Virus record (IMG/VR): IMGVR_UViG_3300024520_000047
Span: 1 to 64,000 of that record
Strand: one strand, 5' to 3'
DNA length: 64,000 bases
In this document: positions 8,301 to 38,533 of the stretch, one piece after another
Layout of the letters: every line of letters begins with the position of its first letter
Numbering within the stretch: position 1 is the first letter of the stretch
The notes under the pieces: generated by a model
What the model was told of the DNA's origin: nothing
The model's input: the letters and a program-made list of their open reading frames with translations, nothing else
Databases searched by the model: none
Translations under genes and position numbers: made by a program

Positions 8301-11300
8301 CCTTGTATTCTCTTTCTTCCTGTTGGTGCCTCATTATTATATACTATATCCTCCACTACATAATTTACAAATAACTCTAACAATTCACCATCATTCAACA
8401 CATATCCATCATCATCCACTATCTGTTCATTCCTATTAGTCCAATAGGGTAGGACTTCACCAGATGCAGCGTTGTCTATAAGTTTTATTACATCCCCTAC
8501 CTTTAATGTAGGTCTACTTATCGGTTGGGATTCTTCATTTAAAATTTCTTCTTCCTCTCTTTTAAAACCAGGACGGAATATCCATTCATCTCCTACTTCA
8601 TAAATAATCTTAGTAGTCATTGTCCATAACCCCTTCCTTTTCCCTTTCTCATCCCAATTCTCCACTTCCCACCTTTCTTTCTCATCGTCCCAATAGGGAA
8701 ATCTACCACTCATAGGTTCAATGTGATAACTAAGTTTCCCTTTAGTGCGAGGTTCCCTAACTCTTTTTATTACCTTATAAGGTATAAAAGTCTCTGGTTC
8801 ATTCTCATGGGTACCATCTACATGTAAAACAATAATCTCATCTCCTTCTTCTAAGTCTGGACTAGGATTTTTTTGTCTTTCTTCCTGTAGGTGAGCAATG
8901 GATGGCTCGTACTTACCTATTTTTAACCACTTATGTCCATTTACTATCATATCCTGATGTAAATTGGCATCGTTAAAGTCTACAAGTAAATCGAGCCTCA
9001 TTACTACATACCCATATACTTGTCTCTTATCCCAGCCTTTATCCCCCTCACCTGTCACTATCCATCCTTCAGCACTTCCATCGTGCCATAATGGGGTTAA
9101 CACCACATACTCATCCCATAAGTTAAGATAACTATCCTTGTCTGTCTTCTCTATTATTTTAATCATATCTCCCGGTTCCAATGGGGGACTAATCTCTCGT
9201 TCCTCTTGTTCTTGTAATACATCACCCCTCAATTTACGTTTGGCGTTGTCTTTGTACTTCGCTCTTTCTTCATCAGATAATTCTACCTTTAACCATTGGT
9301 GGTCACGGTCACGACTTAAGACTTTTAAGTGACGATGGAGGTGACCTGGTAATCCTGGTGTGTCTTGGAACTTTTCCAAATACCCACTCTGTTGTAATTT
9401 ATACAGGTCCTCTATGGTAATAACAATATAATCTCCTTCTTTTTTTGGGGTCCCATATGAAGGATGCCATACCCAATACAATGCAAATGGTGTGGGCGTA
9501 CCGAAAGGCGTTTGTTCTTTTCTTTCTGGTATATCTATAGGTCGTATGATGTCTCCAGATTTTAAAACAGGACTCACTTCTTCTTCCCTTTGTTCCCGTA
9601 ATGTTTTCTTAATATCTTTATTTGTATCAGTTTTTACAATTTCTTTGAACTTATCCAAATAAACTATTCTATCCGAATCTACATTTATTAATTGAGTATT
9701 TGGGGTTAGGTATTTATCTTTAACTTTAATATAGTATACACCATCATCCTTTATACCCAAATCACTTATGAAACCATCAATATAATTTTCATCGTCTATG
9801 CTCTGAGACAATAACCCCTTTAACCCATTCTTAGTTAATTCAGTTGATGGGTCACCTTTGTTTTCATCAGGTTTTTCTTTTGTTGCCTCATACTTCTCTA
9901 AGTATTGGTCTAGTGCTTTAGTGGGCTCTCTCCAATCGGGGTCTTCTTTACCTACTTCATTTCTACCCACTATATTATTGATGAGCATATAGATGGGTGC
10001 ATGTAAAAGTATATTATGCTTAATATTTGGAACGTACTTCAAAATATCATTAGTGACATCATCAAAAATTACCTTATTCCACTTTCCAGTCTTAAACTCT
10101 TGTGCCATATACCAAGCAGCAGCGTTTGCATTAGGACCACCAACATACTCATTTTCTTTTGGGTTTGGTGGTACATCTTCGCCAGCTTTCCTATAGAGTC
10201 CAGATGTTATTCCAAAATCATGACCCTTTGCCCAATCCCTAATACTTGGTGGGTCAAACGCTAATCTTCTTTCTTCATTTTCAGGAGTGTAACCATTGAA
10301 ATCATCTGATGCAATAATAACCCATTGATTAGGGTCTGTAGCTTTATGAAAAGGTACCGCTTTTAATTCCTTACTTACCCATGATTTACCAGCAGATGAT
10401 GTTCCATCTATTAATATAGTAGATTTATCACTTAATCCTTGTTCTCTTTGTTCCCGTAATGTTTTCTTAATATCTACCCCATGCTTAGGTCCCAATGGTG
10501 GGTCCAATAAAAACTTCTGGTTAAGATAATCTCTTAACAAATTTTCCACAAACCAATCTGGAACTGGTTCATCATCTGGTTGGGCTGCAGCAACATCTGC
10601 AACATATCGTGCAAATTTAAGTTTGTATTTATCCCTAATCATTTCCAGTAATCCATCCGAGACAAAGAAAATTTTACTCAAGGGGTCATCACCCAATGCA
10701 ACATCAGGAATGTAATCCCCTTCAGCAATGTCCATGGCTTTGAGTACTACCTTCCCCCACCATCGTTTATATCCTTTGGTATCTTTAAGTGCTGGAGTAA
10801 CAATTTTATTTAATGCTCGGGTAGCGGTAATCCCCACCGCCGCAAATAAAACCTGAGGTAAAAAGAAAGGAATAATTCTCCATAATGATTTAAAAACCCC
10901 TCTACCGATATCGCTTGCTATTCTTTTATTGGTAGCTGCTTCCACCAATGCTTTAAGTTGACCAAAGGTAATAGGTCCTTGTGCTTTACAAAATCCTTTT
11001 ACATTACAAATATTTTCGGTTACGTCTCTTGATGGTGCAACAAAGCCTGATTCTGGGTCTGTCTCACTTCCTTCATATTCGTACTCATCTTCATAATCAG
11101 TTTCTTCATCGTCATCGGGAATCTCAATTTTTGCTACGTCTTCTTCCCATTCTTCTTCAGTATCATATGGTTGTAACTCTATTGGTTCTAATAGGCCTTG
11201 ACCAAACATATCGGCTGCTTCATGGATGTACTCCTTGGGTGGGAAGTGGTCTGGTCTAGTAGCGCCCTTTACGGTTACATAATTAACCCCTATACCTGTT

Positions 11301-14300
11301 GCATTTAAAAGGTCTGTTATATTCTCCTCTAAAACCTCCACTATCTCTTGTCGTACTTCCTCTTTCAACGCTTCATCTGGTTCATCACTAACGCGATTAG
11401 CACGTGTAAGGTCATCCTCTGACTCGTCCCGTACACTTCTACGTAAACCACATGTTCTACATTCTTCTTCATAGTCACCATCTGACCACCACTGGTGGTC
11501 ATGAAAAATGTCCCACAAAGTATAAGTGTCGTGTCCACCCAAAGCTAAATTGGCCATTCCACCACCATCTACTATTACAAATACCCCTATCTCATCCTCA
11601 ACACTCCACCCTCGTTCTTTCCGGACTTTCTTTTGGTCTACATTCCATGGTAGTTCTTTCTCATCAATAGAAGTAACTACATACTTAAAATCATATCCAC
11701 CATCCCAAACCTCCTGTATTCCTTTTAATTTTTCCTGAGCGACTTCGATGGCTTTCTCTCTCCCTCCATGCCATTCAACCAACCACTCATCTATTATCTT
11801 ATAAAGTCCTCTTTCTTTACGGGTATCTAATCCTAATAATTTAAGTATATGTGGGTCATTATGTGGTCCTTTATTATCCCAATAGTTAAAAAGTGATTCC
11901 TTAAAATGTGCATATATTTTTTTTAGCTGGTTGGGCGATTTCGCTGGGTTAATATTTGGAAAATCGGAGTCTTCATTAAACAACATTTTTTTATGCTCTT
12001 CTTCCTCTAATAATCCTTTAGTCAATGTTCTTTTTTTATCTTCATCAAGTCGGTCATTTTTTCCTGACGCCGTTATCTTACCTGCGTTACGTTTTTCTCT
12101 CCAAAAATTATCTACAACTATTTGGGCTTCATGCCATGTCAAACCCGCGATGTGGGTAATACTTCGTATTGCATCCGTGAACTGTCCTTCTCCAAAAGGA
12201 TAGTATTCATTAGGAACCACCGTAGGGAATTGGGTATCTAACCACTCATAAGCATTTTTAATATGTTCTTCCTTAGATAGGATATCCTCCAACAAGAGAT
12301 TTTGTACCCACTTAATGACAGTGGAATGCAAACTCATTCTTCCAAAAGGAGAACGGTCCCAGGGAATGTACCCATCTCCAGTATAGTCCCAGACATTAGA
12401 TTGACCTGTCCATTGGGGTATCCGCCTATTACTATATAAGATAAATTGAACTTCCTTTAGGAACTGTTTAATACTCGCATCACTAACTCCTCCCACCAGT
12501 TTTTCTCCATGTTCCTTTCCTAGAGTATAGAGGTTATATAATTTTAAAAATTTATCTTTGTAGTTATCATTTAAAAATTGAGTAATCTCTTCGTCAGTAC
12601 GTCTAGAAGAAGTGGATTCGGCTAAACCTTGATAGGTAACATCACTTATCTCACTATCTATTATCTCGTGTTCCCCGTAATCATAGGTATCCACTTCACC
12701 GTTCCAATCATAAAATTCATCACGACCTCTCTCATATGCATCATCTTCATCGAACGCCATAATCTCAACACTTCCTCTTCTATATTCAGTTTGGTCCACC
12801 GTTTCCTCATAGTCGACATTATACCATTTGGGTAACTCTTTGAAGGGAGCTTTTATTTTACTATAATCCCCTAAGTCTTCCGCGAAATCCCAATTATCAG
12901 AGGCCCATTTCGCATACTTGGAGGCGTCCACTCTCTGTTCCATCCCACGTGTACCGGGGCTGGTTTTGATACCAAATAATTTCATTAGGTCTACCCATCG
13001 TTTGGCTAACTGGTTACCCCCATAAGCAAAAGTATTAGTAGAAATATGGGATAACTCATTTCTGGTAAAGGTGGATTTAAGTGTATTTAATATTTTACTC
13101 TCTACGGGAGTAAAGGCACTTCTGTCCATTCCTTCTGCTTCTTCATCGGTCCAACTATCCTTATTTCTATCTTGTTCGGTAAGGGGTTGTTCTTTAATAA
13201 GTTTCTTAATCTCTTCTGCCAATCCTTTATACTCTGCACTGGTGGTCTCATGCTCAAATCTTTCAGAATCTCCATAATCATCTACATCAGTGTTACCACC
13301 CCAATCAAAGAATTCCCTGTTTCCTTTATTCAAGGCATCGTCTTCATCAAAGGCAATTAAATCTACATCTCCGCTTTTAAATTCTACTTGACTTACCGTT
13401 TCTTCATAATTTACATTATACCATTTGGGTAAGACTTTAATTGGTTTGGTTACCTTGGAATAATCCATTTCCCCATCCTCTCCTCTAATCTCCTCATCCC
13501 AATTGTCTAATGCCCATTTTGCGTATTTGGATGCTTCAGCTTTCGGTTCCATCTCTCCCCATCCCTCAGGCATCGTATGCCCGAATAACTTCATAGCATC
13601 TTTCCACCTCTTACCTATATTACCAGAATAAGGATATAAATCCGTACTTGTAGTTATTTGAATCAAGTCCTCTTTAGTAAAATTCTTTGCCAGAAAATTT
13701 AAAATAGCAATTTCTTTTTTGGTGAAAGGACTGTATGAAATGCCTTCGTCTTCTTCTTCCCATTGGTCATCTTCATGAACCTGTTCCTGCAGGGAAGTAC
13801 TTTCTTTACGTAGACTAAATGCTGTGGGGTCGGTTAAATTAGGCTCTTGTGGTTCGGGAATTTCTACATACCCACCAAATCCAACGAAAGCATCGGGTCT
13901 GTATTGTTGTGCAATATTTTCTAACCATTCATTTAATACATAAGGAACTGGTAATAAAACAGCATCTCTATTCCATTCTTTTCTATAATCTATTAATCCC
14001 AACTTAGTTAAACGATGGTCAAACTGAGTTAACTCGTGGTCAAATCCATCATACGGTGAACCGTGAGCATAAATCTCCTCATAGTCATCAGGGTCTTCTA
14101 TTCTTCCTGCCGCAATCTCCTCTGCTATTCCTTTGTAGAAAGATTCCAACTCTTCCAGATGGTTCTTGACGAATTTCTCCACTTCCGATTTTTCATGTCG
14201 GTCTAAATAGTGAATAAAAGTTTCTACAGGTACCTCCAATGCACGGTTGTTAGGTTCTGGGTTATGTTCGGGAGAATTTCTAAAGGATTGTGAATTGGGT

Positions 14301-14485
14301 TCTCTAGTAGGGAGGAGAGGTACCATTCCCTTCATGTGTTCCTTAAGGGTTGTTTTTGTTGGAGAATAGGTACGGTGGGGAAATAAGGGACCTATACTGT
14401 CTTCATATAAATGTAACTTTTTTCTTAAGTCAGTACCCATAAGACCTTGGTCTAATGCATCTTTTATTTCACTTAGTGTCGGCAT
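5366..14485 (-). CDS. giant acidic modular polyprotein P1 (3039 aa): 2 B-repeats, P-loop (CPT-like) kinase module, 9 A-repeats, other modules; LxE linkers
   Basis: Uninterrupted ORF; repeats and linkers visible in translation; IDGTSSAGKS Walker A at ~10380-10420. Confidence 0.9.
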   Translation of the reverse strand: MPTLSEIKDALDQGLMGTDLRKKLHLYEDSIGPLFPHRTYSPTKTTLKEHMKGMVPLLPTREPNSQSFRNSPEHNPEPNNRALEVPVETFIHYLDRHEKSEVEKFVKNHLEELESFYKGIAEEIAAGRIEDPDDYEEIYAHGSPYDGFDHELTQFDHRLTKLGLIDYRKEWNRDAVLLPVPYVLNEWLENIAQQYRPDAFVGFGGYVEIPEPQEPNLTDPTAFSLRKESTSLQEQVHEDDQWEEEDEGISYSPFTKKEIAILNFLAKNFTKEDLIQITTSTDLYPYSGNIGKRWKDAMKLFGHTMPEGWGEMEPKAEASKYAKWALDNWDEEIRGEDGEMDYSKVTKPIKVLPKWYNVNYEETVSQVEFKSGDVDLIAFDEDDALNKGNREFFDWGGNTDVDDYGDSERFEHETTSAEYKGLAEEIKKLIKEQPLTEQDRNKDSWTDEEAEGMDRSAFTPVESKILNTLKSTFTRNELSHISTNTFAYGGNQLAKRWVDLMKLFGIKTSPGTRGMEQRVDASKYAKWASDNWDFAEDLGDYSKIKAPFKELPKWYNVDYEETVDQTEYRRGSVEIMAFDEDDAYERGRDEFYDWNGEVDTYDYGEHEIIDSEISDVTYQGLAESTSSRRTDEEITQFLNDNYKDKFLKLYNLYTLGKEHGEKLVGGVSDASIKQFLKEVQFILYSNRRIPQWTGQSNVWDYTGDGYIPWDRSPFGRMSLHSTVIKWVQNLLLEDILSKEEHIKNAYEWLDTQFPTVVPNEYYPFGEGQFTDAIRSITHIAGLTWHEAQIVVDNFWREKRNAGKITASGKNDRLDEDKKRTLTKGLLEEEEHKKMLFNEDSDFPNINPAKSPNQLKKIYAHFKESLFNYWDNKGPHNDPHILKLLGLDTRKERGLYKIIDEWLVEWHGGREKAIEVAQEKLKGIQEVWDGGYDFKYVVTSIDEKELPWNVDQKKVRKERGWSVEDEIGVFVIVDGGGMANLALGGHDTYTLWDIFHDHQWWSDGDYEEECRTCGLRRSVRDESEDDLTRANRVSDEPDEALKEEVRQEIVEVLEENITDLLNATGIGVNYVTVKGATRPDHFPPKEYIHEAADMFGQGLLEPIELQPYDTEEEWEEDVAKIEIPDDDEETDYEDEYEYEGSETDPESGFVAPSRDVTENICNVKGFCKAQGPITFGQLKALVEAATNKRIASDIGRGVFKSLWRIIPFFLPQVLFAAVGITATRALNKIVTPALKDTKGYKRWWGKVVLKAMDIAEGDYIPDVALGDDPLSKIFFVSDGLLEMIRDKYKLKFARYVADVAAAQPDDEPVPDWFVENLLRDYLNQKFLLDPPLGPKHGVDIKKTLREQREQGLSDKSTILIDGTSSAGKSWVSKELKAVPFHKATDPNQWVIIASDDFNGYTPENEERRLAFDPPSIRDWAKGHDFGITSGLYRKAGEDVPPNPKENEYVGGPNANAAAWYMAQEFKTGKWNKVIFDDVTNDILKYVPNIKHNILLHAPIYMLINNIVGRNEVGKEDPDWREPTKALDQYLEKYEATKEKPDENKGDPSTELTKNGLKGLLSQSIDDENYIDGFISDLGIKDDGVYYIKVKDKYLTPNTQLINVDSDRIVYLDKFKEIVKTDTNKDIKKTLREQREEEVSPVLKSGDIIRPIDIPERKEQTPFGTPTPFALYWVWHPSYGTPKKEGDYIVITIEDLYKLQQSGYLEKFQDTPGLPGHLHRHLKVLSRDRDHQWLKVELSDEERAKYKDNAKRKLRGDVLQEQEEREISPPLEPGDMIKIIEKTDKDSYLNLWDEYVVLTPLWHDGSAEGWIVTGEGDKGWDKRQVYGYVVMRLDLLVDFNDANLHQDMIVNGHKWLKIGKYEPSIAHLQEERQKNPSPDLEEGDEIIVLHVDGTHENEPETFIPYKVIKRVREPRTKGKLSYHIEPMSGRFPYWDDEKERWEVENWDEKGKRKGLWTMTTKIIYEVGDEWIFRPGFKREEEEILNEESQPISRPTLKVGDVIKLIDNAASGEVLPYWTNRNEQIVDDDGYVLNDGELLELFVNYVVEDIVYNNEAPTGRKRIQGDPWKGEIKGDIWGYGISREERKRGRRQEWEKDGKEELKASGPYQWIIVNKEEEILQEQEEKVNPPIDVGDTVTVIAHEDPDVEYMTDDEIKEFMENQDLQDTLEGDWHNFEETAELMGYTRWPGKGWYHKKELNDQNPDLFVPYRIVQKVEIGWKEGDVMRYLLLTLPEVEEHEDEKREIWASGRVKGLDYRWLYPSEEKYIISPPTPKSLQEHQEKVNPYINVGDTITVVAYEDPDVEYMTDDEIKEFMENQEVKDTLQGDWHNYEETAELMGFKWHEGRGWYHRDDIETHTTQPDLFVPYRIIQKTPETEEHGRERAYGKRVEERGKRYLLLPLSEINKWKKSHKKGGYDFRWLYPNEVRYIMSPTPPSLQEQDSKKVEVNPPLKPGDKIKVIDVDEDSDQRREFMNGMQIITSERFPKLYHTYTVIDENEEMKWSTEGRGGGSPRYGWTRGYEGSGLDIDEGTQLLWLLMDKKDEDELLRYTEGRRVGYKVIAPYFDKWVKVEDPEVLQEHTKDKLNPQLMIGDEILVLQHNQPEGASFNPPEIYVPYVVVKIKESIKNNTFNDKYVHYEIERKELTPEEMQADLRAGGGWRRLTHLYPNDTWMLRPDSRGEELNEQSQDKVNPQLMIGDEIMVIESIGWRRKYTTGGRKPDLYEPYVVTAIKFRQPENWEGPDADLKYYEIEPIGLTDEDKRFGTAVNKWMGREKRIYPTDTWIYNPTFRREELNEQDFPFNRDNKKQELDHPKGEPPWSIRRGKQHYAMNVDPTPQEPVTALNNYLVKNSPFNFLGFDYYLSTVPGNMPGEARIDVYVPVLDDSVTADNIWKDILKFYKKKEEYDDWGNDIVGKLDDPYSMEEIPMRDIGYHAKWPDFYRYEEDFAELHPEAVEDYNRRDSDYINPDGKVYETSWRERFNTLKDEMKELAKLFGLENAVINRDPGHPWKRQQDSYGSQDIRPGTDIPYSWPRESDEIEWDEE
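6395..6736. repeat. 24-bp direct repeat at starts of A-repeats 8 and 9 (encodes QLMIGDEI)
   Basis: tatctcatctcctatcattaattg at 6395-6418 and 6713-6736. Confidence 0.85.
7380..8140. repeat. recent tandem duplication of A-repeats 5 and 6
   Basis: ~7480-7620 and ~7950-8090 near-identical; both encode EDPDVEYMTDDEIKEFMENQ...DTL.GDWHN.EETAELMG. Confidence 0.9.
9588..10475. repeat. perfect 30-bp direct repeat flanking the P-loop kinase module
   Basis: ctttgttcccgtaatgttttcttaatatct at 9588-9617 and 10446-10475; both lie in DIKKTLREQRE linkers. Confidence 0.95.
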
Positions 14486-15807
14486 TAAGAAGTATATTTA
14501 TCTAATGCCTCTTGTGCTTGACGGCCTCTTTTATTTTGGTTTACTCTACTTTGATTACTGGGTCTTTCAAAATTTACCATAAAAGAAGCGCCCGCATCTG
14601 ATGCATTGGTCGTTGTTAATAAAGCATTATATGCTTTTTTCTCTTTTCCTTGGAGTTCACTCCATAAATATTCTAATTGTGCGTCGGGGTCGGTAATAGG
14701 TTTTTGTTGTTTTTTCGCAAAGTCATTTAATCTATATAGTCTAGTGTCATGCCATTGTGCGAGCCCCATAGACGTTCCTCTGTCTCCAATAGTACCCGTC
14801 TTAAAATTAGACTCAGATTTCATATTACCCGCAATTCCCGCCGCTTGTTCGGGGGTCAAACCTTTATTAATAAAAAATTTAATGACGTGATTAGAATCTA
14901 TTTGTTGATTACCGGGGTATTTTTTCCCTTTCAAAGGTAATATAAAATTAGCGTCAGGTTCTATTACACCTTTTCTTTCTAATTTTTGTACTGTAGTGGG
15001 GTCATTTATCTCGGGATTGAGATTAATTTTCTTGGGGTCTTTCATCGCTCCCAACACATCAGGGGTTATCATATCAGTAATCTTAAAACCATAATCTTTC
15101 TGAAATGCATTCACCGCTGCTAAAGTTTCGGGACCAAATTTCCCATCTATGCCAAACTTAGGTAATATATAATTTCTCGCAATTAAATCTATTTGCATTT
15201 CTTTTACCTTATCCCTAACATTCCTTCTTCCCCTTCTCATTCCATCTGATAAAGTAAGATTACCTTGTGGTATATTTTGAATTTCTATTTTTTCTTTTGG
15301 TTTTCTTCCTATTCTTTTAATAGTTACACCATCTAAGTAAGGTACAGGGTCAGTAGTAGAACTCCCTTTAGCTTTATCATACACTTCATAATGTAGATGT
15401 GCTCCAGTAGATGAACCGGGACAGTAGTCTCTTTTTCCTCCTCCAGATAATCCAATAACTTGTCCTTTACTTACCGATTCACCTTTGTTAACCCGGATAT
15501 CTTTAATGTGACAATAACGTGTTTTCAATCCTGCACCATGGTCAATGTATATATTACCACCACACGCCCCCTTGGTACATTGAGCTTTAATAATCACACC
15601 ATCTGCTGGGGATAATACTTCGGTTCCACTTTTTGCGTTAATATCTACCCCATGGTGTTGTCTCGTTTTTTTAGTAATGGGATGCACTCTTATACCATAG
15701 GGACTGCTAATTTTAAGACGGCCAGCCAATGGTGGCCCTAAACTAACTTCTACCTCTTCATTTAATAGAATTCTATTTAATTGTTTTTCAGTTATTAATA
15801 TTTTCAT
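14485..15807 (-). CDS. M23 peptidase + peptidoglycan-binding domain + phage-tail-type lysozyme
   Basis: HHGVD (HxxxD) and HLH of M23; DGKFGPETLAAVNAFQ PG-binding; AAGIAGNMKSES...GLAQW tail-lysozyme motif; leader MKILITE...ILLNEE. Confidence 0.9.
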   Translation of the reverse strand: MKILITEKQLNRILLNEEVEVSLGPPLAGRLKISSPYGIRVHPITKKTRQHHGVDINAKSGTEVLSPADGVIIKAQCTKGACGGNIYIDHGAGLKTRYCHIKDIRVNKGESVSKGQVIGLSGGGKRDYCPGSSTGAHLHYEVYDKAKGSSTTDPVPYLDGVTIKRIGRKPKEKIEIQNIPQGNLTLSDGMRRGRRNVRDKVKEMQIDLIARNYILPKFGIDGKFGPETLAAVNAFQKDYGFKITDMITPDVLGAMKDPKKINLNPEINDPTTVQKLERKGVIEPDANFILPLKGKKYPGNQQIDSNHVIKFFINKGLTPEQAAGIAGNMKSESNFKTGTIGDRGTSMGLAQWHDTRLYRLNDFAKKQQKPITDPDAQLEYLWSELQGKEKKAYNALLTTTNASDAGASFMVNFERPSNQSRVNQNKRGRQAQEALDKYTS

Positions 15808-18876: not shown

Positions 18877-18901
18877 TCTTCTTTTTTAGAATTAATTTAA
18901 A

Positions 18902-18985
18902 TCTAGAGCCCCTACCTGACACAATATCAGGTAGGTTATCTAGTCAGGCCGAATAAGAATTCAGCTCCACCACCCTTTCGGGTTA
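18902..18985 (-). ncRNA. candidate structured RNA directly 3' of tRNA-Gly
   Basis: Hairpins ACCC-GAAA-GGGT, CTGAAT-TCTT-ATTCGG and a 9-bp CCTACCTGA/TCAGGTAGG; possible closing GGAGCT/GGCTCT. Confidence 0.4.
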
Positions 18986-18989
18986 ATAG

Positions 18990-19062
18990 AGCGGAAGGAT
19001 AGGATTTGAACCTCCGTCCCCATACTGGTAGTATGGTGCTTTACCAATTAAGCTACTCCCGC
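18990..19062 (-). tRNA. tRNA-Gly, anticodon ACC (atypical; one-nt bulge in T-stem; CCA not encoded)
   Basis: GCGGGAG acceptor/CTTCCGC + U73; D-arm GCTT/AAGC; anticodon arm CCATA-CTACCAG-TATGG; T-loop TTCAAAT. Confidence 0.8.
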
Positions 19063-19066
19063 TTAT

Positions 19067-19309
19067 TTAATGATGTGTGACAGTCCATGTTCTATAGGTA
19101 CTATCCTGAAAATCGGTATATGTTTTCATGGCCTGAAGAATATCCACCGCATCAATACCTAATAATTTTATAGCATCTTTCTCACTAAGTCCATACTTCT
19201 GTATAATCGAAAATTTCTTTTCTCCGATTTGAGTTCGAAGGAAATGCATCGTCTGGTCCCAATGAAGGAATGCCCCCGTGTAAACACTATCTCTATTTTC
19301 ATTTTTCAT
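19067..19309 (-). CDS. hypothetical protein
   Basis: 80 aa; ATG 4 nt after promoter -7 box. Confidence 0.65.
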   Translation of the reverse strand: MKNENRDSVYTGAFLHWDQTMHFLRTQIGEKKFSIIQKYGLSEKDAIKLLGIDAVDILQAMKTYTDFQDSTYRTWTVTHH

Positions 19310-19430: not shown

Positions 19431-20000
19431 ATGAATCCCAACCGTATAAAATCTATCCGCCGCACCTATATTATATTTTCTATAATAGTAGGAATTGTTG
19501 CTCCTATTTTATGCTATTGGTTAATTCCTCATTTTGACATAAAACACGACCCTTTATCTAAATTTGGTATCTCCGAACCCACTTCCCATATCTGGTTAGT
19601 CTCATTAATGTTTATTGCCATTGGATTATGGTTAAATGGGGAATATCGGATTGGGGAAATGATTAAGAAAAAAAAATGGCGTCCTTTATTGAAGTGGTTA
19701 CTGAGAATTTCTACTTTTTCATTATTATTAATGGCAGTAATAGATATGAGTTGGCACTGGACACATAAAACTTTAGCTTTACTTTTTTTCTGTGGATATA
19801 ATGTTTTTGTGTTTGCCTTTGGTATTGTGCGTTCTTTAACTTATGTTAGAAGAGGAATGTTTTCAGTAATAATGGCTACGCTTATGTTATCCACATCTTT
19901 ATTAATTCTTCCATTTCCAAGTTATGGTGTTGCTGAAATATCATATATATTTCTGATAGTGCTGTGGAACACTAAAGTCTTATTTAGGAAAAAATTATAA
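19431..20000 (+). CDS. polytopic membrane protein (DUF998-like)
   Basis: ~6 hydrophobic helices; PLSKFG and H..LALLFF motifs resemble DUF998. Confidence 0.6.
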   Translation: MNPNRIKSIRRTYIIFSIIVGIVAPILCYWLIPHFDIKHDPLSKFGISEPTSHIWLVSLMFIAIGLWLNGEYRIGEMIKKKKWRPLLKWLLRISTFSLLLMAVIDMSWHWTHKTLALLFFCGYNVFVFAFGIVRSLTYVRRGMFSVIMATLMLSTSLLILPFPSYGVAEISYIFLIVLWNTKVLFRKKL

Positions 20001-23000
20001 GGTTTCTTTCCATAAATTTATTAATCGGTTAGCAGTTGGTATTATGTTGCGTTTGGCTTCTCTAAGAGTTACTTCTTTATTTTTATTTTTAAGAGAATGG
20101 ATGGTGGTATCCCAGATAAGGTTTTTAATTTTATCACCATCTTCACTTAAGAGTCCACTATCCTTTTTTAATACAGTAGAATAGGTATCAATCCAGTCTT
20201 TTCCACCAATTAAAAAGTGGGAATAAAAATTCTCATTTGTCATCTCTTTATTTTTAACTTCACTTAAAAAATCAAAAATTAGTTTTCTTTTTTCAACTAG
20301 TTGGGCTGTGGTTACGTGTTGGGAACGTACTTTAATAAAAGCAGTTAAATCCATTTTATCAAACGACTCAAAGAACCTCCTTTTTATTAAAAAATCCTTT
20401 TGGGCTGCTTGTAAATGTCTGTTAACCTCTTCTGTCATATCTCCACGCAACTTTCCTCCCATTGTAAGGGTGTAGTCCGACTTTTTCTCAAAGTCTCTTA
20501 AATCGAAGATATTAATTGTATCTCCAATTTGAAATGGGATATTACTTAGGTTACCACTCTTTGCAATATCAACTATTTTCCCAGTTGGTGTCATATAAAG
20601 TAAAAAGGTCTGAGAGTTTTTACCCCAACCACCTTTGTATTCAAATCTTCCAATGATTAATAATCGTCTAATATAATTAGGAATGTTAGGTCTTTCTTCT
20701 TCTGGTAATTGTGGAATAATGGCTTCCGTTAACGGAGTGTTCCTGATGATAATCCATTTATCTCTCCCTCCTCCATCATCAGCATAATAATCATAGTCTT
20801 CTACTCCTTGATATAATCCCAAGTGTCCATCGTAAGTATCTATCTCGTATTTAATTCCTCCTCTAAACATATCACCTCTCGGTTCTTCGGATGCATTGCC
20901 TTCATATACATGTACCACGATTCCTACAGTAGTATTGGGTATCGTCAGTGTTGTAGTTCCGGGAGGTGCGGGGTCCATTTCTAAGTCCCAAATAAAAATT
21001 TTATCTCCTACTTTAAGTGGTGGACTTATTTCCTCTTTGGGTATTTTGGTGGTATCGATTTTTTGTTCCTTTAAAGTATTGAAATGATAGGCATCCGTAA
21101 TCTCCCAATCATCCGATTCATAATCTCCATGCTCATAGGTATGCATTTCTCCGCCCCACCCATAAAAATCTTCCCTCGATTTCTCTTCCGCATCCGTTGC
21201 TCCAAACGCGGTGACGTTTGCGCTACCCCTTTTAAATACTTGTTCCCAACCACTTTCTTCTGCCTCTACTTCATATTCGGAGGGGTATTCTTTTCTTGCA
21301 TTTTTAATTTGTCCATAATCTCCATCGTCTGCTTCGTGTCTATTCTCTAGTGCCCAGCGTGCATATTTGCTTATTATTGTCCAGATTTGAGCACTTCCCT
21401 CTCCACTGTTGGGTTCACCAAATAGTTTCATTACATCCTCATATCTAGAAGTAACTTGCCGTTGTATATCAGTTTTAAAAGTTCTGGTGGCAATTGCTTT
21501 TAATTCATCGAACGTAAATTCTCTAACAATAGTATTTAATATTTTAACTTCGAGTGCGGTAAAAGGACCATACTCTACATATAAGTCATCATCCTCTAAT
21601 CCACTCTCGGCATCTTGTTCGTTCAATCTTCTGGATGTAATATTCTTGCCACTAGCATCAATTTCTTTTTGTCGTGCCTCTATCTCTTGGGGTATATTGG
21701 ATACATGTTTTTTCACCATAATCCACTTATCGTTAGTCGTAAGGATTCTATTTCCCCTATCCCATTCAATATTTTCTCCTGTTATTGGTAACATGTTCCA
21801 ATACAAATTACGGAAGGTGGGTTCATTTCCAAAAGTTATTTGTTCTGTATTCACGGGTTCGGGAGAAGTAACATAATAAGTCTCCATGATAGTAGGAAAA
21901 GTATCTTCCCCATGTAATTCACCTCTACTTCGCGTTCTATACATGCCAGAACCTGCAGATTGTTTATATCTGGTATCTTTATCTACATCTACCACTCTAA
22001 TAACGTCTCCAATATTTAAAGATGGATTAAGTTTTTCTTTCTGTTCAGTAATCGGTTTTTTATGAACCTTAATCCATTGGTATATCCAAGGGTATAATAG
22101 TTTTGCGGTACCTCTACCTACCATATAGTCCCCATTTAAATAATCTTGATGTTTGTCTGCTGGAAGAAGTGTATATCTCCAAGGCCACTGTGCTTTGTGC
22201 CCAGCAGACTCTTTTTCTACTACTATGTATGGTGTTAATATCTCAGGTCTTTCCGCTTCTCCTCGCCCTTTCATCCTCTCCCTCTCCCTGTCTATATCTA
22301 TTACTCGTATACTATCACCCACTTCTAACTCTGGACTTAATTGGGTTTCTTTTTGTTCTCTTAAAATATATGGTGTGTCACCACCCCATATTTCTACTTC
22401 CTTGCCTACCCCTTTATCATTTCCTTCCCACTCGCCTGTCAGTGCAACCAATTCCATGTTGTCTATCCTCTCTATTATTTGACGTGCCCAAGCTTTTACA
22501 ACAGGGTTGGGGGTTAATCCTCTTAAACGATTATAAGATATGAAATCTCTTTCATCTGGTGGACCAATATTCGTAGTATCAATTAATCCTAATTTATATA
22601 AATCTTCATTGATGGTACCCCATAAATCATATAATTCCATTTGAGCCGTTTCAATTTTATCCGCCAAAAGGCCTATCTCACCTCTTCCTCCTTCTCCTCC
22701 ACCGAATCCACCGTATTTAAAATTTCTTACTCCACCTTCAGTATATGAGTCCTCATAACTGGTGAGTAAAAGTTTAGCTGCTAGAGCTAATTTCTTATAT
22801 ATTCTGAAAACCTCTTGTGTATAATTCTGGTGTAAAAACTTCTTTAGGGGTAAATTCTCACTCTGTTCTTTTATGGTTTCCCGATGTGTAGTACTTTCTA
22901 TCTCCCACCCATCAGATTCCCAATCTCCATAATCATAGGTCTCCATCTCACCACCCCAGTCGTACCAATCAGCTGTAGCCCTATCAGTCACATCCTGTGA

Positions 23001-26000
23001 ACTAAATCCGGGTATATCAACAGAACCGTGTTTGAATATTTTTTCCCATCCGCTTTCTTCCGCCTCTACTTCAAAGTAAGAGGGATAAATTTTAACTGGA
23101 GTTTTAACCTGTGCATAATCTCTTTTTTCATCGACCTCACCTGCAGCTTCACCCCAGTTATCCACCGCCCATCTTGCATATTTGCTCGCTATTACCCAAT
23201 CCTCCATGGTACGAGCGGGTATCGAAAATAATTTCATTATATCATTATATCTCTCTTCTAAGGCACGGGGTAAATTAGCGGCATCACTCTCCCCAATCAT
23301 CTCTAAGTCCTCTGAGGTAAACTCTTGGGCTAACTTATTCAATAACTTGACTTCCATGTTGGTGAAGGGAGTAAAGTCATAGTATTGGTCGTCATCATAG
23401 AATCCTTTATCTTTACCAAATTCCATTTTTTCTTCGTCTAACTGTAAACCTCCACGGTCTATCTTGCTCAATGCATCTAAATTCCCAAAGGAAGGATGGT
23501 CGGTTATCTTATCTTTTTTACTTTGTCTCATTACATCCCATACTCTAGGCTTCATCTTCATGTGATTACTCACCATATACCCTATCTCTTCTGGGTCACC
23601 ACCTAAACTCTCAATGAATTCACTATACTCATTCACTAACTGGGTGGAAACTTTTTCATGACCATGTGCGGTAGGTTGTCCTGTTTTAGGATTTACACCT
23701 AATGTGGCTAACTTACCTAGGTCATGAAAATATGCTGACAAAATTAAATTTATATTCTCAGGTTGTTCAGCAAACGCTCGGTTGGTTACCGTAATAATAT
23801 GTTTAAGTACATTTCCTTCTGGATGCCATTCAGGATTTTGTTTGGCCTTCCATTGGTCCATTAATATTTGTTGTAATGGTCTGGGTGAAGCATTGTATAA
23901 TTCTTTAAAGTTAGTCACTGATTCCCCTAATAAATCGATGTCATCATCCCACATCCCTTTATTTTTCTCCACCAGAATCCATGTATCGGTGTCGGGCATT
24001 AGATATCTCATGATTGCCTTATTTGAAAGAACACCGGGGCGGTCGGGGTAAGACACATCTTTCATGGGTCTATTAATACCATACCAATATTGGTCCCGCT
24101 TGGGTGTAGTGGTAACCCTATAAGGGACAAACAGTTCAGGAACTTGGTCGGGTATTTCTCCTTCTTTATCTTTAACATCTATTACTATTATCTCATCTCC
24201 ACTTTCTAAGGGTGGGTTTACTTTTTGTTGGTCTATGTTCTCGGTGAGACTTGCTGGGTCTGTAGGTTTTGGTGGGCCGAAATTTCCCTCATCATCTTTT
24301 GCCGATGGTTCTTTACTTTGAGGGACCAATTCATACAAGTCATCATATAAGATGTCATTAAAATATTCTTCACTAATATCTGGGTACCAATAACCATCAA
24401 AGTATTTTCCATCTACCTCTAAGTGGTCTCCCCGTTTACCCTCATTATAGTCATCTCCTCGTCCAAACTCTTCTATCATAATCTCCCCAAAAAGTTGGTC
24501 TGGAGTAAGACGTGCCATGTCTCTCATTACATCTTCCAAAGGTCGACTAGCATAATCTTCATGAAACTGAAAGAAATCTGTATTATCCCAATCGTCATCA
24601 CTTATCCACCTTTTTAAGTCACTTTCTATTATCCACGAATAACTTCCATTATTATTATCTCTTACCCATTTTCCTGTTCCGTCGAACCAGTCCTCTATCT
24701 TATCCCGAATATCGTCAAAGATGGCACGTTTGGTTGCATCTTCCTGTTCTATACTATAGGCGCGGGTAATCTTATTTCTAATTTCATCTATCTCACTCTC
24801 TTTTTCGGCAGCAATATCATCCTCAAAATCATTGTCTACATGACCCTCCAATAGTCTGCCGGCCACTTCTTTATCTTTAATCCCAAGAATTTCCATAATC
24901 ATTTTCCAACTTCCATCATCGAGATTATCTAACATCCCCTCATAAAATTCGTTATGGTCATACCATCCATCCCAATCCCATGCGTCCTCACCACACAGAT
25001 ATTTCCGTATGAGTTCTTCATGATTGTCATCATCAAATAATCGAGCTAAATCATCACAATCCCATAATGATGTTACCGGAATGGGTGCTTGAGTATTCAT
25101 TATGTATCTTTTGAGTAACATGGTGACACCATCTCCTTGGATGCCTTGCATCCCTAACAGTTTAAGGTCTTCCCAACTTACCCCATCTTGGTCCCATTTT
25201 TTATAAAGATATTTAACTGCATTTTCAGGATAATCTTTCATTATCCATTCTTTGTCTTCATCTTCCATTACTGAATCAAAAGGCCATCCTCCATGAAATA
25301 AATCTAATTGTTGTTCTTCTTTAATAACTTCTACCGAAGTAGTATCGTTGAGGGTATCTCTGTCTGGATAAAGAGCATCATTAAGGAGTTCTAAGTGATA
25401 TTCCACCTCCGCATCGTGGTCTGCCCAATTAATAACCATACCCTCTTCATCAAAATCAAAATCACCTTCTAATTGGTACTCGGTGGTATCATAATATTGA
25501 CTCATTAATTCTACTGTCTCCTCATTTGCGTTCACGGTATCAGTTAACTCATCAATGGTATTAAGATATTCCAGTTCTACAGTACTCAAATATTCTGCTT
25601 GTAACTCTTCATAATAATACTGGTCTACATATTTATCTTCCATTTGGTCACAGTCACACTTTCCTTCATCTTTTTCATCCTCCGTACATTCCCTATACTC
25701 ATCTTTTTCATCATCATAAAACTCAGTCCACTGTATACATTCACAGTCCTCCTCACTTAATTCACCATAAAAATGACCCCCACTTTGGAGACACTCTTCT
25801 AATATTTCTTCTGACTCAGCCTCTTCAGCATAAAACTCTACAGTATAGTAATAGATATTCGGTAGAGGTTCCCATAATAAATTCGTTATATTCCAATCAC
25901 TAAAGCCCCCACCTTCTTTAATTATCAACCATAAGGTCGCAGCTATCTGTTTTCCATCACTACTACTAAAAATTCCCCCCACATCTAGATATTTCCGTAA

Positions 26001-37777: not shown

Positions 37778-38533
37778 TTATTTTTCAGCTCTTTTTGGGT
37801 AGGGTTTTATTAAATGACTAATTTGTTTCTCTAAATATTTCTTGTTAGTTTTACTTCCACGGAAATAAAAATATCTGTGTTTATTATATTGGGGTATAAA
37901 CTCCGCTTCAGGAAAAGCTTTTAAAATGTCTTCCTTTTTCTGAGACCCTAATTTACTTCTCATCGCGCGAGCACCATATATCTTCCCATTAATCTTAACA
38001 CCAAACCTGTCTTTAGGTTTACTTTTAACTTTAGGGTTGGACTCCCTCATACTACCAATATAAGTAAAATTACATGACTGGTATATTGTTCCAATCTCTC
38101 CTGCCGCTGGGTCAATTGTGGCAGTTATAACATCATAGTGGAATGGAAGTTGTTTAATGCTTTCCATAATTAATTTACTACCACTATGTGGATGTGCCCA
38201 ATGAACACAGACACCTCTACTAAGAAGTATAATTCTTCCAGTATAGTTATATTTGTCCCATTTACCCAAATTCTCAATGTAGTCTTTGGAAAATACAGTT
38301 ACTCCCGCACACACCCCATCATAAAAAATACCAAAAAAATAAAGAGAAATAGCAGGCATACAACCCAACCATTCATACTCTTCTACTATCTGAGTAGCTA
38401 ATTTTCTATCTATAGGTTTAACAATAGCATTAGAGATGTCTCTATTAATTGGTGGTATTTCCCCCTCTAATTCTTTCTGCTCCCTAATCTTTCGTTGGTG
38501 GGCTTTTCCTATGGGCAATATAATATTAGACAT
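37778..38533 (-). CDS. Mom-like GNAT-fold putative DNA-modification protein
   Basis: ILLSRGVC..., DPAAGEIGTIYQSCNFTYIG, KHRYFYF resemble Mu Mom D...G.G.VYQASNF.Y.G and HRY. Confidence 0.7.
   Translation of the reverse strand: MSNIILPIGKAHQRKIREQKELEGEIPPINRDISNAIVKPIDRKLATQIVEEYEWLGCMPAISLYFFGIFYDGVCAGVTVFSKDYIENLGKWDKYNYTGRIILLSRGVCVHWAHPHSGSKLIMESIKQLPFHYDVITATIDPAAGEIGTIYQSCNFTYIGSMRESNPKVKSKPKDRFGVKINGKIYGARAMRSKLGSQKKEDILKAFPEAEFIPQYNKHRYFYFRGSKTNKKYLEKQISHLIKPYPKRAEK

What the first reader, a model, noticed from the sequence alone, without database searches (positions are those of the whole stretch)
18990..19062. tRNA-Gly with the very rare ACC anticodon
Seen: bacterial GlyRS identity elements are intact (G1-C72, C2-G71, G3-C70, U73, C35, C36), but position 34 is A. 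C32-G38 and U33-A37 can pair, collapsing the loop to three nt; the T-stem has an extra A; CCA is not encoded. Known: A34 tRNA-Gly is essentially absent from cells, and bacterial TadA mainly edits tRNA-Arg(ACG). Inference: it may be a GGU-biased or four-way decoder, an anticodon variant that evades host anticodon nucleases, a non-translational Gly donor, or a decaying pseudogene.
Basis: partly seen in the sequence, partly recalled or inferred. Interest (0 to 1): 0.65.

Follow-up and report, generated by a model that had tools for sequence, protein, structure and literature searches.

The report
Phage glycine tRNA tied to Mom
The odd glycine tRNA with an ACC anticodon is real and conserved, and it belongs to a family of misshapen phage tRNA-like genes that travel with Mom enzymes (which use glycyl-tRNA to modify phage DNA), so it is most likely a private glycine carrier for DNA modification and not an ordinary decoder.

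Summary
On the minus strand at 18990-19062 lies a cloverleaf RNA with the bacterial glycine identity set, anticodon ACC, a C32-G38 pair, an extra A in the T stem and no encoded CCA.

It is neither an error nor a decaying pseudogene. Five assemblies, two relatives at about 83% protein identity, and contigs from RNA-type libraries all keep it unchanged while the flanking coding DNA diverges.

It belongs to a family found in uncultured phages that ARAGORN mostly misses. All members keep G1-C72, C2-G71, U73 (and G3-C70, one exception), C35 C36, the C:G-closed loop and the bulged A. Positions 33 and 34 vary freely (UA, AU, GA, GU, UU), and position 34 does not follow codon usage.

The family is linked to Mom-family genes (Pfam PF25680). 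Members sit directly at the Mom gene in at least ten small-phage contigs, including 6 of 7 sampled Mom-first. This phage has two Mom genes, one of them in the window at 37778-38533.

Mu Mom was recently shown to transfer glycine from Gly-tRNAGly onto adenine in DNA. The best reading is therefore a dedicated, poorly decoding glycyl carrier for Mom. This is inferred, not shown; a GGU decoder is not excluded.

A conserved 3' RNA module that follows the tRNA remains unexplained.

The parts
18990..19062 (-). Non-canonical glycine-type tRNA (anticodon ACC). It has a C32-G38 closing pair and an unpaired A in the 3' strand of the T stem. U73 is followed by CUA, so no CCA is encoded.
   Evidence: ARAGORN; Rfam 42.4 bits; parsed cloverleaf and compensatory changes; conserved in relatives.
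18966..18989 (-). First hairpin of the conserved 3' module. The trailer C74-U-A-U-U-A, together with U73, pairs with the invariant UGGUGGA. This encloses CCC-GAAA-GGG and abuts the acceptor stem.
   Evidence: RNAfold; the 17-nt core CCCGAAAGGGTGGTGGA is identical in clade B and in GOLLD-carrying phages; in L034 a 115-nt insertion sits inside the 5' strand and leaves the flanks intact.
18948..18965 (-). Second hairpin of the 3' module (GCUGAAU-UCUU-AUUCGGC).
   Evidence: Folds; in other loci the stem is closed by CCGA..UCGG and shows A-U to C-G and U-A to A-U exchanges.
18892..18947 (-). Terminal long hairpin and the end of the conserved non-coding block. It is a true hairpin-plus-U-tract terminator in clade B, but has only a weak U-tract here.
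   Evidence: Alignment A1 is conserved to column 228, which is window 18892; fold; the terminator scan finds none here; contigs from RNA-type libraries end at 18898-18910.
19067..19309 (-). 80-aa ORF of unknown function whose stop codon lies 4 nt before the tRNA. It is present only in clade A relatives and is probably co-transcribed.
   Evidence: ORF list; gene calls in L003, L005-L008; no Pfam or PHROG match; RNA-library contigs run 37-42 nt into it.
37778..38533 (-). Mom-family GNAT gene (copy 1 of 2 in this phage), the proposed user of the glycyl-tRNA. Copy 2 lies outside the window at G000:150152-150727 (+).
   Evidence: Pfam PF25680: 80.7 bits for copy 1 and 96.8 bits for copy 2; a profile that includes both copies matches the Mu Mom crystal structure 8BV8, E 4e-20.

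Best explanation
The gene encodes a dedicated glycine carrier for DNA modification. It is a tRNA-shaped RNA that the host glycyl-tRNA synthetase can still charge but that is poorly suited to translation. It supplies Gly to the phage's two Mom-family enzymes, which would put glycine on the N6 of adenines in phage DNA; the glycyl group then rearranges to N6-carbamoylmethyl-adenine and protects the DNA from restriction.

Shown here:
- The RNA gene, its conservation and its cloverleaf.
- The invariant features of the family.
- Free variation at positions 33 and 34.
- The gene linkage with Mom.

Taken from the literature:
- Mu Mom uses Gly-tRNAGly.
- Three T-stem pairs set EF-Tu affinity.
- Staphylococci keep separate non-proteogenic tRNAGly for cell-wall synthesis.

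Inferred:
- Transcription and processing by RNase P and a 3' nuclease, with CCA added by the host.
- Charging by GlyRS.
- Exclusion from EF-Tu and the ribosome by the T-stem bulge and the closed anticodon loop.
- Use by Mom.
For: 1. Conservation. The tRNA is kept unchanged where the neighbouring ORF diverges, and all four stems show compensatory changes.

2. What is and is not conserved in the family. The family includes clade B L009/L034/L081/L082 and others, L092, L109-L112, L117, L204, L205 and L226-L231. All members keep C35, C36, the C32:G38 closing pair and the unpaired A in the T stem, and all but the L205/L206 copy (G3-U70) keep G1-C72, C2-G71, G3-C70 and U73. Positions 33/34 read UA, AU, GA, GU, UU. 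Some loops have 6 nt. G18G19 is lost in several members. So the GlyRS identity set is kept and the decoding features are not.

3. CCA. Several small-phage members encode CCA directly after U73 (L110, L111, L112, L117, L228-L231). This points to an aminoacylatable 3' end.

4. Linkage, starting from the tRNA. All 12 true family hits of a DNA-pattern scan lie in contigs with a Mom gene. In L109, L110, L111, L112/L115 and L117 (and in L092 from the metagenome scan) the Mom gene is directly adjacent.

5. Linkage, starting from Mom. Of 7 diverse Mom homologues fetched without regard to RNA, 6 have a family member at or overlapping the Mom 3' end.

6. This phage has two Mom genes.

7. One Mom-carrying phage (G015) has a normal tRNA-Gly(UCC) in its tRNA cluster and, separately, a bulged family member.

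8. Position 34 does not follow codon usage. Clade B ('UCC') phages use GGU for 50-63% of Gly codons; high-GC members use GGC for 46-51%.

9. Literature. Mom transfers glycine from Gly-tRNAGly to dA and rejects Gly-tRNAAla (PMC13219725). Three T-stem pairs govern EF-Tu binding (PMC3239215). The staphylococcal non-proteogenic tRNAGly precedent is in PMC7826273.
Against: - Nothing here shows charging, CCA addition, EF-Tu exclusion or use by Mom.
- In this phage the tRNA is 19 kb from one Mom gene and about 131 kb from the other. None of 80 loci of the jumbo-type Mom clade has a family member within 4 kb.
- The jumbo phages are one lineage, so their co-occurrence with Mom counts as roughly one event.
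- Mu itself, and Roseobacter phage CRP-212 in the 50 of its 54.7 kb searched (closest cultured relative of Mom copy 2), lack such an RNA, so it is not required for Mom.
- This copy has U33, a formally normal 7-nt loop and G18G19. Its anticodon matches the phage's commonest Gly codon (GGU, 44%), just as the other phage tRNA (Arg-UCU) matches AGA at 60%.
- An engineered tRNAGly(ACC) is active in elongation (Boren 1993, cited in PMC4928997).
- In some high-GC contigs the Mom ORF runs through the RNA, so some of the conservation there could be due to coding.
Confidence: 0.55

Rival explanations
1. It is a working elongator tRNA-Gly that reads GGU (or, with unmodified A34, all four GGN codons) and supplements the host tRNA pool for an AT-rich phage. 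On this reading the odd features are tolerated or serve to tune a strong CC anticodon.
For: - GGU is the phage's commonest Gly codon (44%), and the only other phage tRNA (Arg-UCU) matches the commonest Arg codon (AGA, 60%).
- This copy has U33, a 7-nt loop and G18G19, and both ARAGORN and Rfam call it a tRNA.
- tRNAGly(ACC) can be charged and is active in elongation (PMC4928997, citing Boren 1993).
Against: - Homologues have A33 or G33, 6-nt loops, or no G18G19, and ARAGORN rejects almost all of them.
- Position 34 does not follow Gly codon usage.
- The invariant unpaired A sits among the three T-stem pairs that set EF-Tu affinity (PMC3239215).
- A34 destabilises the tRNAGly anticodon loop (PMC4928997).
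- G015 carries a normal tRNA-Gly as well as a family member.
- This reading does not explain the linkage with Mom.
Confidence: 0.22
2. It is mainly a structural or processing element. A tRNA-shaped handle would recruit RNase P and 3' nucleases to cut the transcript and release or stabilise the conserved 3' module RNA. Alternatively, it acts together with the module as one regulatory RNA, for example a T-box-like unit in which UGGA pairs with the U73 end.
For: - The tRNA and module form one conserved block of about 170 nt with sharp borders.
- The trailer pairs from U73 onward with the invariant UGGUGGA.
- Contigs from RNA-type libraries span the tRNA-module junction.
- The module's layout, GGG - UGGN-containing bulge - hairpin - CCC, recalls the T-box antiterminator (PMC7583486).
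Against: - Many family members have no module (L092, L106-type, L109-L117, L226-L231), and several of them encode CCA.
- The module occurs alone in GOLLD-carrying phages.
- A mere processing handle would not need an invariant C35 C36 and the full Gly acceptor identity.
- There is no Rfam T-box hit, no Stem I, and the terminator does not overlap the candidate antiterminator.
Confidence: 0.1
3. It is a decoy or nuclease-resistant variant. It would protect glycine decoding against, or soak up, a host tRNA-targeting defence such as an anticodon nuclease or an acetyltransferase toxin acting on Gly-tRNA.
For: - Phage tRNAs with altered anticodon loops that escape host nucleases are known (from memory, not checked here).
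- The closed, variable loop would change nuclease recognition.
Against: - No defence or counter-defence gene context was found.
- This does not explain why the RNA sits at the 3' end of Mom genes in many unrelated phages, nor the invariant T-stem bulge.
Confidence: 0.05
4. It is a decaying pseudogene or an assembly or sequencing error.
For: - The Rfam score is low (42 bits), the T stem is irregular, and A34 is unusual.
Against: - The sequence is identical in five assemblies from different samples. It is nearly unchanged at about 83% protein identity and in RNA-library contigs, while the flanks diverge.
- There are compensatory changes across the family.
Confidence: 0.01

Closest known systems
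Non-proteogenic tRNAGly isoacceptors of Staphylococcus aureus (glycine donors for FmhB/FemA/FemB in cell-wall synthesis; PMC7826273)
   Same: - An extra tRNAGly that keeps the GlyRS identity set (G1-C72, C2-G71, U73, C35, C36).
- D and T arms that deviate so that EF-Tu binds weakly, reserving a pool of Gly-tRNA for a GNAT-fold aminoacyl transferase outside the ribosome.
   Different: - This one is encoded by phages, not by the cell.
- The partner gene is Mom, which acts on DNA, not a Fem transferase. No Fem family gene is present.
- The deviation is an unpaired A in the T stem plus a C:G-closed anticodon loop, not base substitutions.
- Low EF-Tu affinity is inferred here, not measured.
- The two lineages are not related.
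Host Gly-tRNAGly as co-substrate of phage Mu Mom (Silva et al. 2026, PMC13219725; preprint 10.1101/2023.03.24.534169)
   Same: - Same enzyme family. Pfam Mom scores of 80-97 bits for the two copies in this phage, and a profile match to structure 8BV8.
- Same amino acid identity of the tRNA.
   Different: - Mu uses any of the three host isoacceptors and encodes no tRNA.
- The paper describes harvesting a host resource. Term searches of the paper and the preprint, and a reading of the paper's Discussion, found no mention of a phage-encoded partner RNA.
- Here the phage, and many uncultured phages, carry their own non-canonical Gly-type RNA, often fused to the 3' end of the Mom gene.
Ordinary phage-encoded tRNAs that match phage codon usage
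   Same: - A tRNA gene in a large phage genome.
- Its anticodon is complementary to the phage's commonest Gly codon.
   Different: - A34 with CC.
- A bulged T stem and a closed loop.
- A score about 27 bits below that of the phage's own tRNA-Arg.
- Homologues that lack U33.
T-box riboswitch discriminator domain (compared with the 3' module only; PMC7583486)
   Same: - The order of elements: GGG, then a bulge beginning UGGN, then a hairpin, then CCC.
- UGGA could pair with a U73-CCA end, and here it pairs with U73-CUA in cis.
   Different: - No Stem I or specifier.
- No ACC in the bulge.
- No G-U at the base of the hairpin.
- The terminator is a separate hairpin.
- No Rfam T-box hit.
- It is a resemblance only.
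GOLLD RNA loci of marine phages (Rfam RF02032)
   Same: - The same 3' module, with its 17-nt core identical, lies 1.2-1.9 kb downstream of GOLLD in six viral contigs.
- GOLLD is known to lie near phage tRNAs (10.1101/2024.12.08.627333).
   Different: - This phage has no GOLLD or ROOL hit.
- The module-only record that was tested has no Mom gene.

Membership tests
Canonical bacterial-type elongator tRNA-Gly | Cloverleaf with four helices | tested here: met
   Rfam 42.4 bits. Across 13 homologues, 94% of cells are paired, with compensatory changes in all four stems.
Canonical bacterial-type elongator tRNA-Gly | GlyRS identity set: G1-C72, C2-G71, G3-C70, U73, C35, C36 | tested here: met
   Read directly from the sequence. 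Invariant in the 13 aligned members (A6) and in L226-L231; the L205/L206 copy has G3-U70 instead.
Canonical bacterial-type elongator tRNA-Gly | Open 7-nt anticodon loop with conserved U33 and G, U or C at position 34 | tested here: not met
   This copy has U33 but A34, and C32-G38 plus U33-A37 close the loop in the minimum-energy fold. Homologues have A33 or G33, or 6-nt loops.
Canonical bacterial-type elongator tRNA-Gly | Regular 5-bp T stem (pairs 49-65, 50-64, 51-63 contact EF-Tu) | tested here: not met
   An invariant unpaired A lies between pairs 51-63 and 50-64. It is also present in L204 and L205, which were found by the covariance model and not by the DNA pattern.
Canonical bacterial-type elongator tRNA-Gly | Anticodon follows codon usage or decoding need | tested here: inconclusive
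   It matches GGU here. Across the family there is no relation between position 34 and Gly codon usage.
Dedicated co-substrate of a Mom-family DNA glycyl transferase (proposed class) | Mom gene in the same genome or adjacent | tested here: met
   Two Mom genes in G000. Adjacent in L092, L109-L112, L115, L117 and L226-L231. Present in all four clade B records tested.
Dedicated co-substrate of a Mom-family DNA glycyl transferase (proposed class) | 3' CCA end carrying glycine | not testable with these tools
   CCA is not encoded here. It is encoded in L110, L111, L112, L117 and L228-L231. No CCA-adding enzyme is found in the phage record. Charging cannot be tested here.
Dedicated co-substrate of a Mom-family DNA glycyl transferase (proposed class) | Phage DNA carries N6-carbamoylmethyl-adenine made from this RNA | not testable with these tools
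   This needs nucleoside mass spectrometry or SMRT kinetics on phage DNA, plus enzyme assays.
Staphylococcal non-proteogenic tRNAGly | Partner Fem-family transferase and membership of the staphylococcal lineage | tested here: not met
   No FemAB or Acetyltransf_6 match in G000, and blastn of the tRNA against GenBank phages finds no close relative; similarity to staphylococcal tRNAGly sequences was not tested. It is an analogue, not a member.
T-box riboswitch (3' module) | Stem I with specifier, a T-box bulge UGGNACC, and a terminator that overlaps the antiterminator | tested here: not met
   No Rfam T-box hit at E up to 1-5. No Stem I. The terminator is a separate hairpin.
tRNA pseudogene | Neutral decay relative to its flanks | tested here: not met
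   About 170 nt with 2 substitutions against roughly 15% divergence in the adjacent ORF end.

The most novel reading that the evidence does not exclude
Many uncultured phages, this jumbo phage included, carry a private 'orthogonal' glycyl-carrier RNA. It is charged by the host GlyRS but kept out of translation, and its job is to feed Mom-type enzymes that hypermodify phage DNA. That would be a non-proteinogenic tRNA dedicated to DNA modification. In the marine jumbo phages it is additionally fused to a T-box-like 3' domain (UGGA opposite the U73 end) that may hold or sense its acceptor end.
Probability: 0.45. Interest if true: 0.85.

Novelty: new variant of a known kind. Interest (0 to 1): 0.78.

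Why it matters
Mom was the long-standing puzzle of phage Mu DNA modification. Its use of Gly-tRNAGly was published only in 2023-2026, and that work describes the phage as harvesting host tRNA.

A phage-encoded, structurally deviant Gly carrier that sits at the 3' end of Mom genes in many unrelated phages would show three things:
- Phages can insulate DNA hypermodification from translation with their own tRNA-like cofactor.
- There would be a second natural case, after the staphylococcal cell-wall tRNAs, of tRNAs evolved for a non-ribosomal transferase.
- The tRNA features that Mom and GlyRS need, and that EF-Tu and the ribosome do not, would be defined by nature. In the most reduced members these are the acceptor stem, the CC loop and the bulged T arm.

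It also matters for annotation. Standard tRNA finders miss almost all members or call them by a meaningless anticodon.

The idea is directly testable with in vitro transcripts, GlyRS, EF-Tu and recombinant Mom.

Tried and rejected
- Direct DNA and protein searches for close relatives found nothing: IMG/VR with a neighbouring protein and with an exact tRNA pattern, and blastn of the region and of the tRNA against GenBank phages. Relatives came instead from the 2457-aa neighbour.
- The first 17-mer scan for the module was swamped by a coding match in a family of ~40-kb phages and by type II tRNA variable arms. A stricter pattern fixed this.
- The module is absent from prokaryote genomes. The only two hits are chance coding matches.
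- The cell-wall donor idea (Fem-type) is rejected: no FemAB or Acetyltransf_6 in the phage.
- No phage CCA-adding enzyme was found.
- No GOLLD or ROOL in this phage.
- The Y-RNA/Ro idea, prompted by the DUF2828+DUF7788 protein at 39222-40655, was not pursued. The RNA has closed acceptor ends and lies 20 kb away.
- The lambda nut idea (boxA CGCUCUUA plus a boxB-like CCCGAAAGGG) was dropped, because module-only loci lack the boxA-like part.
- Reading GGUGGUGGA as a small ORF was dropped, because the frames are not conserved across indels.
- Adjacency of the RNA to the jumbo-type Mom clade was tested and not found: 80 loci, only ordinary tRNAs.
- Roseobacter phage CRP-212, the closest cultured relative of Mom copy 2, has no family member in its first 50 kb. 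No GenBank phage matches the L112-type RNA.
- The profile alignment of six Mom proteins was too diverse for the search for related loci; a three-sequence alignment worked.
- The reads tool returned only Logan contigs. These can show presence in RNA-type libraries but not RNA ends, strand, CCA or charging.
- An ARAGORN 'tRNA-Gly(acc)' of 85 nt in L216 is a poor prediction and was ignored.

Full report
**What is at the coordinates**

The window is the first 64 kb of a 245,874-bp IMG/VR virus record (33% G+C, CheckV 77% complete) from an uncultured jumbo phage. A 293-kb version and three other assemblies carry the same region.

ARAGORN finds one tRNA in the window, tRNA-Gly(acc), at 18991-19063 on the minus strand. 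Rfam's tRNA model matches 18991-19062 at 42.4 bits. The whole phage record has only one other tRNA, a canonical tRNA-Arg(TCT) at 69 bits.

Read on the minus strand, the RNA has:
- G1-C72, C2-G71, G3-C70 and U73.
- Anticodon loop C32-U33-A34-C35-C36-A37-G38.
- A T stem GGAGG/CCU-A-UC with one unpaired A.
- CUA after U73, so no encoded CCA.

The minimum-energy fold closes C32-G38 and U33-A37 into a 7-bp stem with an ACC triloop. Only the strand was left unstated.

**It is conserved, not decaying**

The 2457-aa neighbouring protein led to independent assemblies (L004-L006) and to relatives at about 83% protein identity (L007, L008/L084, L095). All carry the same tRNA with ACC.

In alignment A1 the 3' end of the upstream 80-aa ORF differs at about 15% of sites. 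A block of about 170 nt, covering the tRNA plus roughly 100 nt downstream (window 18892-19062), has two substitutions.

Short contigs from three marine and sediment RNA-type libraries lie only on 18891-19104. They span the junction between the tRNA and the downstream block, end just after the last hairpin, and show no change in the anticodon. These are Logan contigs and the conserved block biases which runs are found, so this is only weak evidence of transcription.

**A family of non-canonical Gly-type tRNA-like genes**

A syntenic relative at about 40% protein identity (L009) has a homologous RNA at the same place that neither ARAGORN nor Rfam's gathering threshold calls.

DNA patterns built on the bulged T arm and the acceptor strand retrieved more members from viral and metagenome contigs. 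A covariance model (R1) retrieved still more.

Members fall into these groups:
- Clade A: this phage, with loop C-UACCA-G.
- Clade B: many jumbo-phage fragments, with loop C-AUCCA-G.
- Diverse smaller or higher-G+C phages, with loops C-GACCA-G, C-GUCCU-G, C-AUUCCA-G, C-UUCCA-G, C-AUCCU-G and others.

Invariant across the family:
- G1-C72, C2-G71 and U73, and G3-C70 in all but the L205/L206 copy (G3-U70).
- C35 and C36.
- The C32:G38 closing pair.
- The unpaired A in the 3' strand of the T stem.

Variable across the family:
- Positions 33 and 34.
- Loop length (5 or 6 nt inside the C:G pair).
- G18G19.
- In the most reduced members, the whole D arm.

The cloverleaf is supported by compensatory changes in all four stems: 94% of cells paired against 39-52% when partners are slid, 12 of 22 pairs changed on both sides, and 0 of 500 shuffles as high. 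Several small-phage members encode CCA right after U73.

In short, what the glycyl-tRNA synthetase reads is kept, and what the ribosome and EF-Tu read is not.

**The link to Mom**

Clustering the ORFs next to family members showed that in the small phages the RNA lies directly after, or in one case directly before, a gene of the Mom family. The contigs and Pfam PF25680 scores are L110 2.7e-23, L112 1.4e-36 and L092 1.3e-12; L109 and L111 retain only the Mom C-terminal end, assigned by BLAST clustering with L092, and L117's Mom by tblastn (E 4e-7). Often the Mom ORF runs into the RNA.

This phage has two Mom genes. One is in the window at 37778-38533 (minus strand, 80.7 bits). The other is at G000:150152-150727 (96.8 bits). 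A profile of six of these proteins, both own copies included, matches the crystal structure of phage Mu Mom (8BV8) at E 4e-20 over nearly its whole length.

All four clade B records tested carry Mom, even fragments only 20% complete. A record that has the 3' module but no tRNA-like gene does not.

As a reverse test I took seven diverse homologues of the small-phage Mom (37-70% identity), fetched 1.5 kb on each side, and searched with R1 with filters off. Six of the seven have a family member at or overlapping the Mom 3' end, with scores of 63, 59, 46, 38, 30 and 24.5 bits, and all six show the family hallmarks.

Mom is otherwise rare.

The link has limits:
- The jumbo-type Mom clade has no family member within 4 kb in 80 loci.
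- In this phage the distances are 19 kb and about 131 kb.
- Mu, and Roseobacter phage CRP-212 in the 50 of its 54.7 kb searched, have no such RNA.

**Why this points to a mechanism**

Silva et al. (Nat Commun 2026, PMC13219725; preprint 2023) showed the following:
- Mu Mom transfers glycine from Gly-tRNAGly to the N6 of adenine in double-stranded DNA.
- The glycyl group then rearranges to N6-carbamoylmethyl-dA.
- All three E. coli tRNAGly isoacceptors work, but Gly-tRNAAla does not.

They describe this as harvesting a host resource. They note possible costs to translation. Term searches of the paper and the preprint, and a reading of the paper's Discussion, found no mention of a phage-encoded tRNA.

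Three T-stem base pairs (49-65, 50-64, 51-63) are primarily responsible for EF-Tu's sequence-specific binding (PMC3239215). The family's invariant unpaired A sits between the second and third of them.

Staphylococcus aureus offers a precedent. Its separate 'non-proteogenic' tRNAGly keep the GlyRS identity set, bind EF-Tu weakly, and serve the GNAT-fold transferase FmhB (PMC7826273).

Together with the gene linkage, the simplest reading is that this RNA is a private glycyl carrier for the phage's Mom enzymes, charged by the host GlyRS but largely kept out of translation. One Mom-carrying phage (G015) has both a normal tRNA-Gly(UCC) in its tRNA cluster and a separate bulged family member, which fits a division of labour.

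**The decoder alternative**

For this particular phage a decoding role cannot be excluded:
- U33 and G18G19 are present.
- GGU is the commonest Gly codon (44%).
- The other phage tRNA matches the commonest Arg codon (AGA, 60%).
- An engineered tRNAGly(ACC) can be charged and is active in elongation, although A34 destabilises the tRNAGly anticodon loop and tRNAGly(ACC) is absent from eukaryotes and almost all cells (PMC4928997).

Against it:
- Position 34 does not follow codon usage in the family. Clade B phages with 'UCC' use GGU for 50-63% of glycine codons, and high-G+C members use GGC for 46-51%.
- U33 is not conserved.
- The T-stem bulge is invariant.

I put the Mom-carrier reading at about 0.55 and a mainly decoding role at about 0.22. 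A dual role is possible.

**The 3' module**

Right after U73 the trailer pairs with an invariant UGGUGGA. This encloses a CCC-GAAA-GGG hairpin. Then come a second hairpin and a long terminal hairpin. In clade B the terminal hairpin is a clear intrinsic terminator.

The 17-nt core is identical in clade B. It is also identical in six marine viral contigs that have no tRNA-like gene but carry a GOLLD RNA 1.2-1.9 kb upstream on the same strand. In those contigs the module has its own promoter-like site and a different 5' hairpin.

The module is absent from 185,579 prokaryote genomes, matches no Rfam family, and is not tied to Mom. Some clade B members have a structured 115-nt insertion between the tRNA and the module.

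Its layout (GGG, a bulge starting UGGN, a hairpin, CCC) and the pairing of UGGA with the U73 end recall the T-box discriminator (PMC7583486). The defining T-box features are missing, however. I leave it unexplained.

**Verdict**

The finding is real and more interesting than a rare anticodon. The ACC is one state of an unconstrained position in a conserved phage RNA family that tRNA finders mostly miss and that travels with Mom genes.

Noticed in passing
window 18892-18989 (-); L020, L022, L024, L044, L047, L069, L076: The conserved 3' RNA module (core CCCGAAAGGGTGGTGGA, a second hairpin closed by CCGA..UCGG, then a terminator) also occurs without any tRNA-like gene. In six marine viral contigs it lies 1.2-1.9 kb downstream of a GOLLD RNA (Rfam 255-319 bits) and just before an M23 peptidase gene. 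It matches no Rfam family and is absent from prokaryote genomes.
   Followed up: partly
L034:11107-11227, also L086 and L089: A structured insertion of about 115 nt sits between the tRNA-like gene and the 3' module in some clade B phages. It lies inside the 5' strand of the first module hairpin and keeps the flanks intact.
   Followed up: no
L009:13225-13395 and L081:1-133: In clade B the tRNA-like gene is preceded by a near-consensus promoter (TTGACA, 17 nt, TATATT). A conserved leader of about 110 nt follows, containing a Shine-Dalgarno-like AAGGAG and a 6-codon ORF (MISGTT).
   Followed up: no
L205/L206 with L217/L218 (records G007, G008): Two tandem tRNA-like genes with loop C-AUCCU-G. The first has a bulged A, an unusual T loop (UGAAAAU), and G3-U70 in place of G3-C70.
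   Followed up: no
L204 and L215 (record G015): One Mom-carrying phage of about 196 kb has a canonical tRNA-Gly(UCC) with encoded CCA inside a tRNA cluster. It also has a separate bulged, C:G-closed family member elsewhere in the genome.
   Followed up: partly
L228:1193-1259 and L229:2129-2195: Reduced family members of 67 nt at the 3' end of Mom genes have lost a regular D arm. They keep the Gly acceptor stem, U73-CCA, the NNCCA hairpin and the bulged T arm.
   Followed up: no
window 39222-40655 (-): A 477-aa protein with DUF2828 and DUF7788 domains. From memory these are related to the TROVE/vWA architecture of Ro60-like RNA-binding proteins, whose bacterial partners are Y RNAs with tRNA-like domains. 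No link to the tRNA was tested.
   Followed up: no
window 5366-14485 (-), 19995-27368 (-), 14485-15807 (-): Giant ORFs of 3039 and 2457 aa flank the locus, together with an M23 peptidase/PG-binding/tail-lysozyme protein. Relatives of the giant proteins carry PPK2 and PAP2 domain hits. The tRNA-like gene is syntenic within this cluster across clades A and B.
   Followed up: partly
window 42778-43854 (-), 1590-2657 (-), 29411-30917 (-), 43910-45829 (-): Auxiliary genes: a glutamine synthetase-like protein, thymidylate synthase, two ClpP-family proteases with a PPIase and a glutaredoxin nearby, and a PcfJ-like protein.
   Followed up: no
G000:233317-233391 (+), outside the window: The phage's only other tRNA is a canonical tRNA-Arg(TCT) (69 bits). 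It matches AGA, which makes up 60% of the phage's Arg codons.
   Followed up: yes
L224 (Roseobacter phage CRP-212, MZ892988.1) 10357-11274: The closest cultured relative of Mom copy 2 (52% identity) lies in and just upstream of a gene annotated only as a MazG pyrophosphohydrolase, so it looks like an unannotated Mom-MazG fusion.
   Followed up: no
window 18964-18972 (-): UGGUGGAGC in the module is the exact complement of GCUCCACCA, which from memory is the 3' end of tRNA-Ala and tmRNA. GGU-GGU-GGA also reads as three glycine codons. Both may be coincidence.
   Followed up: no
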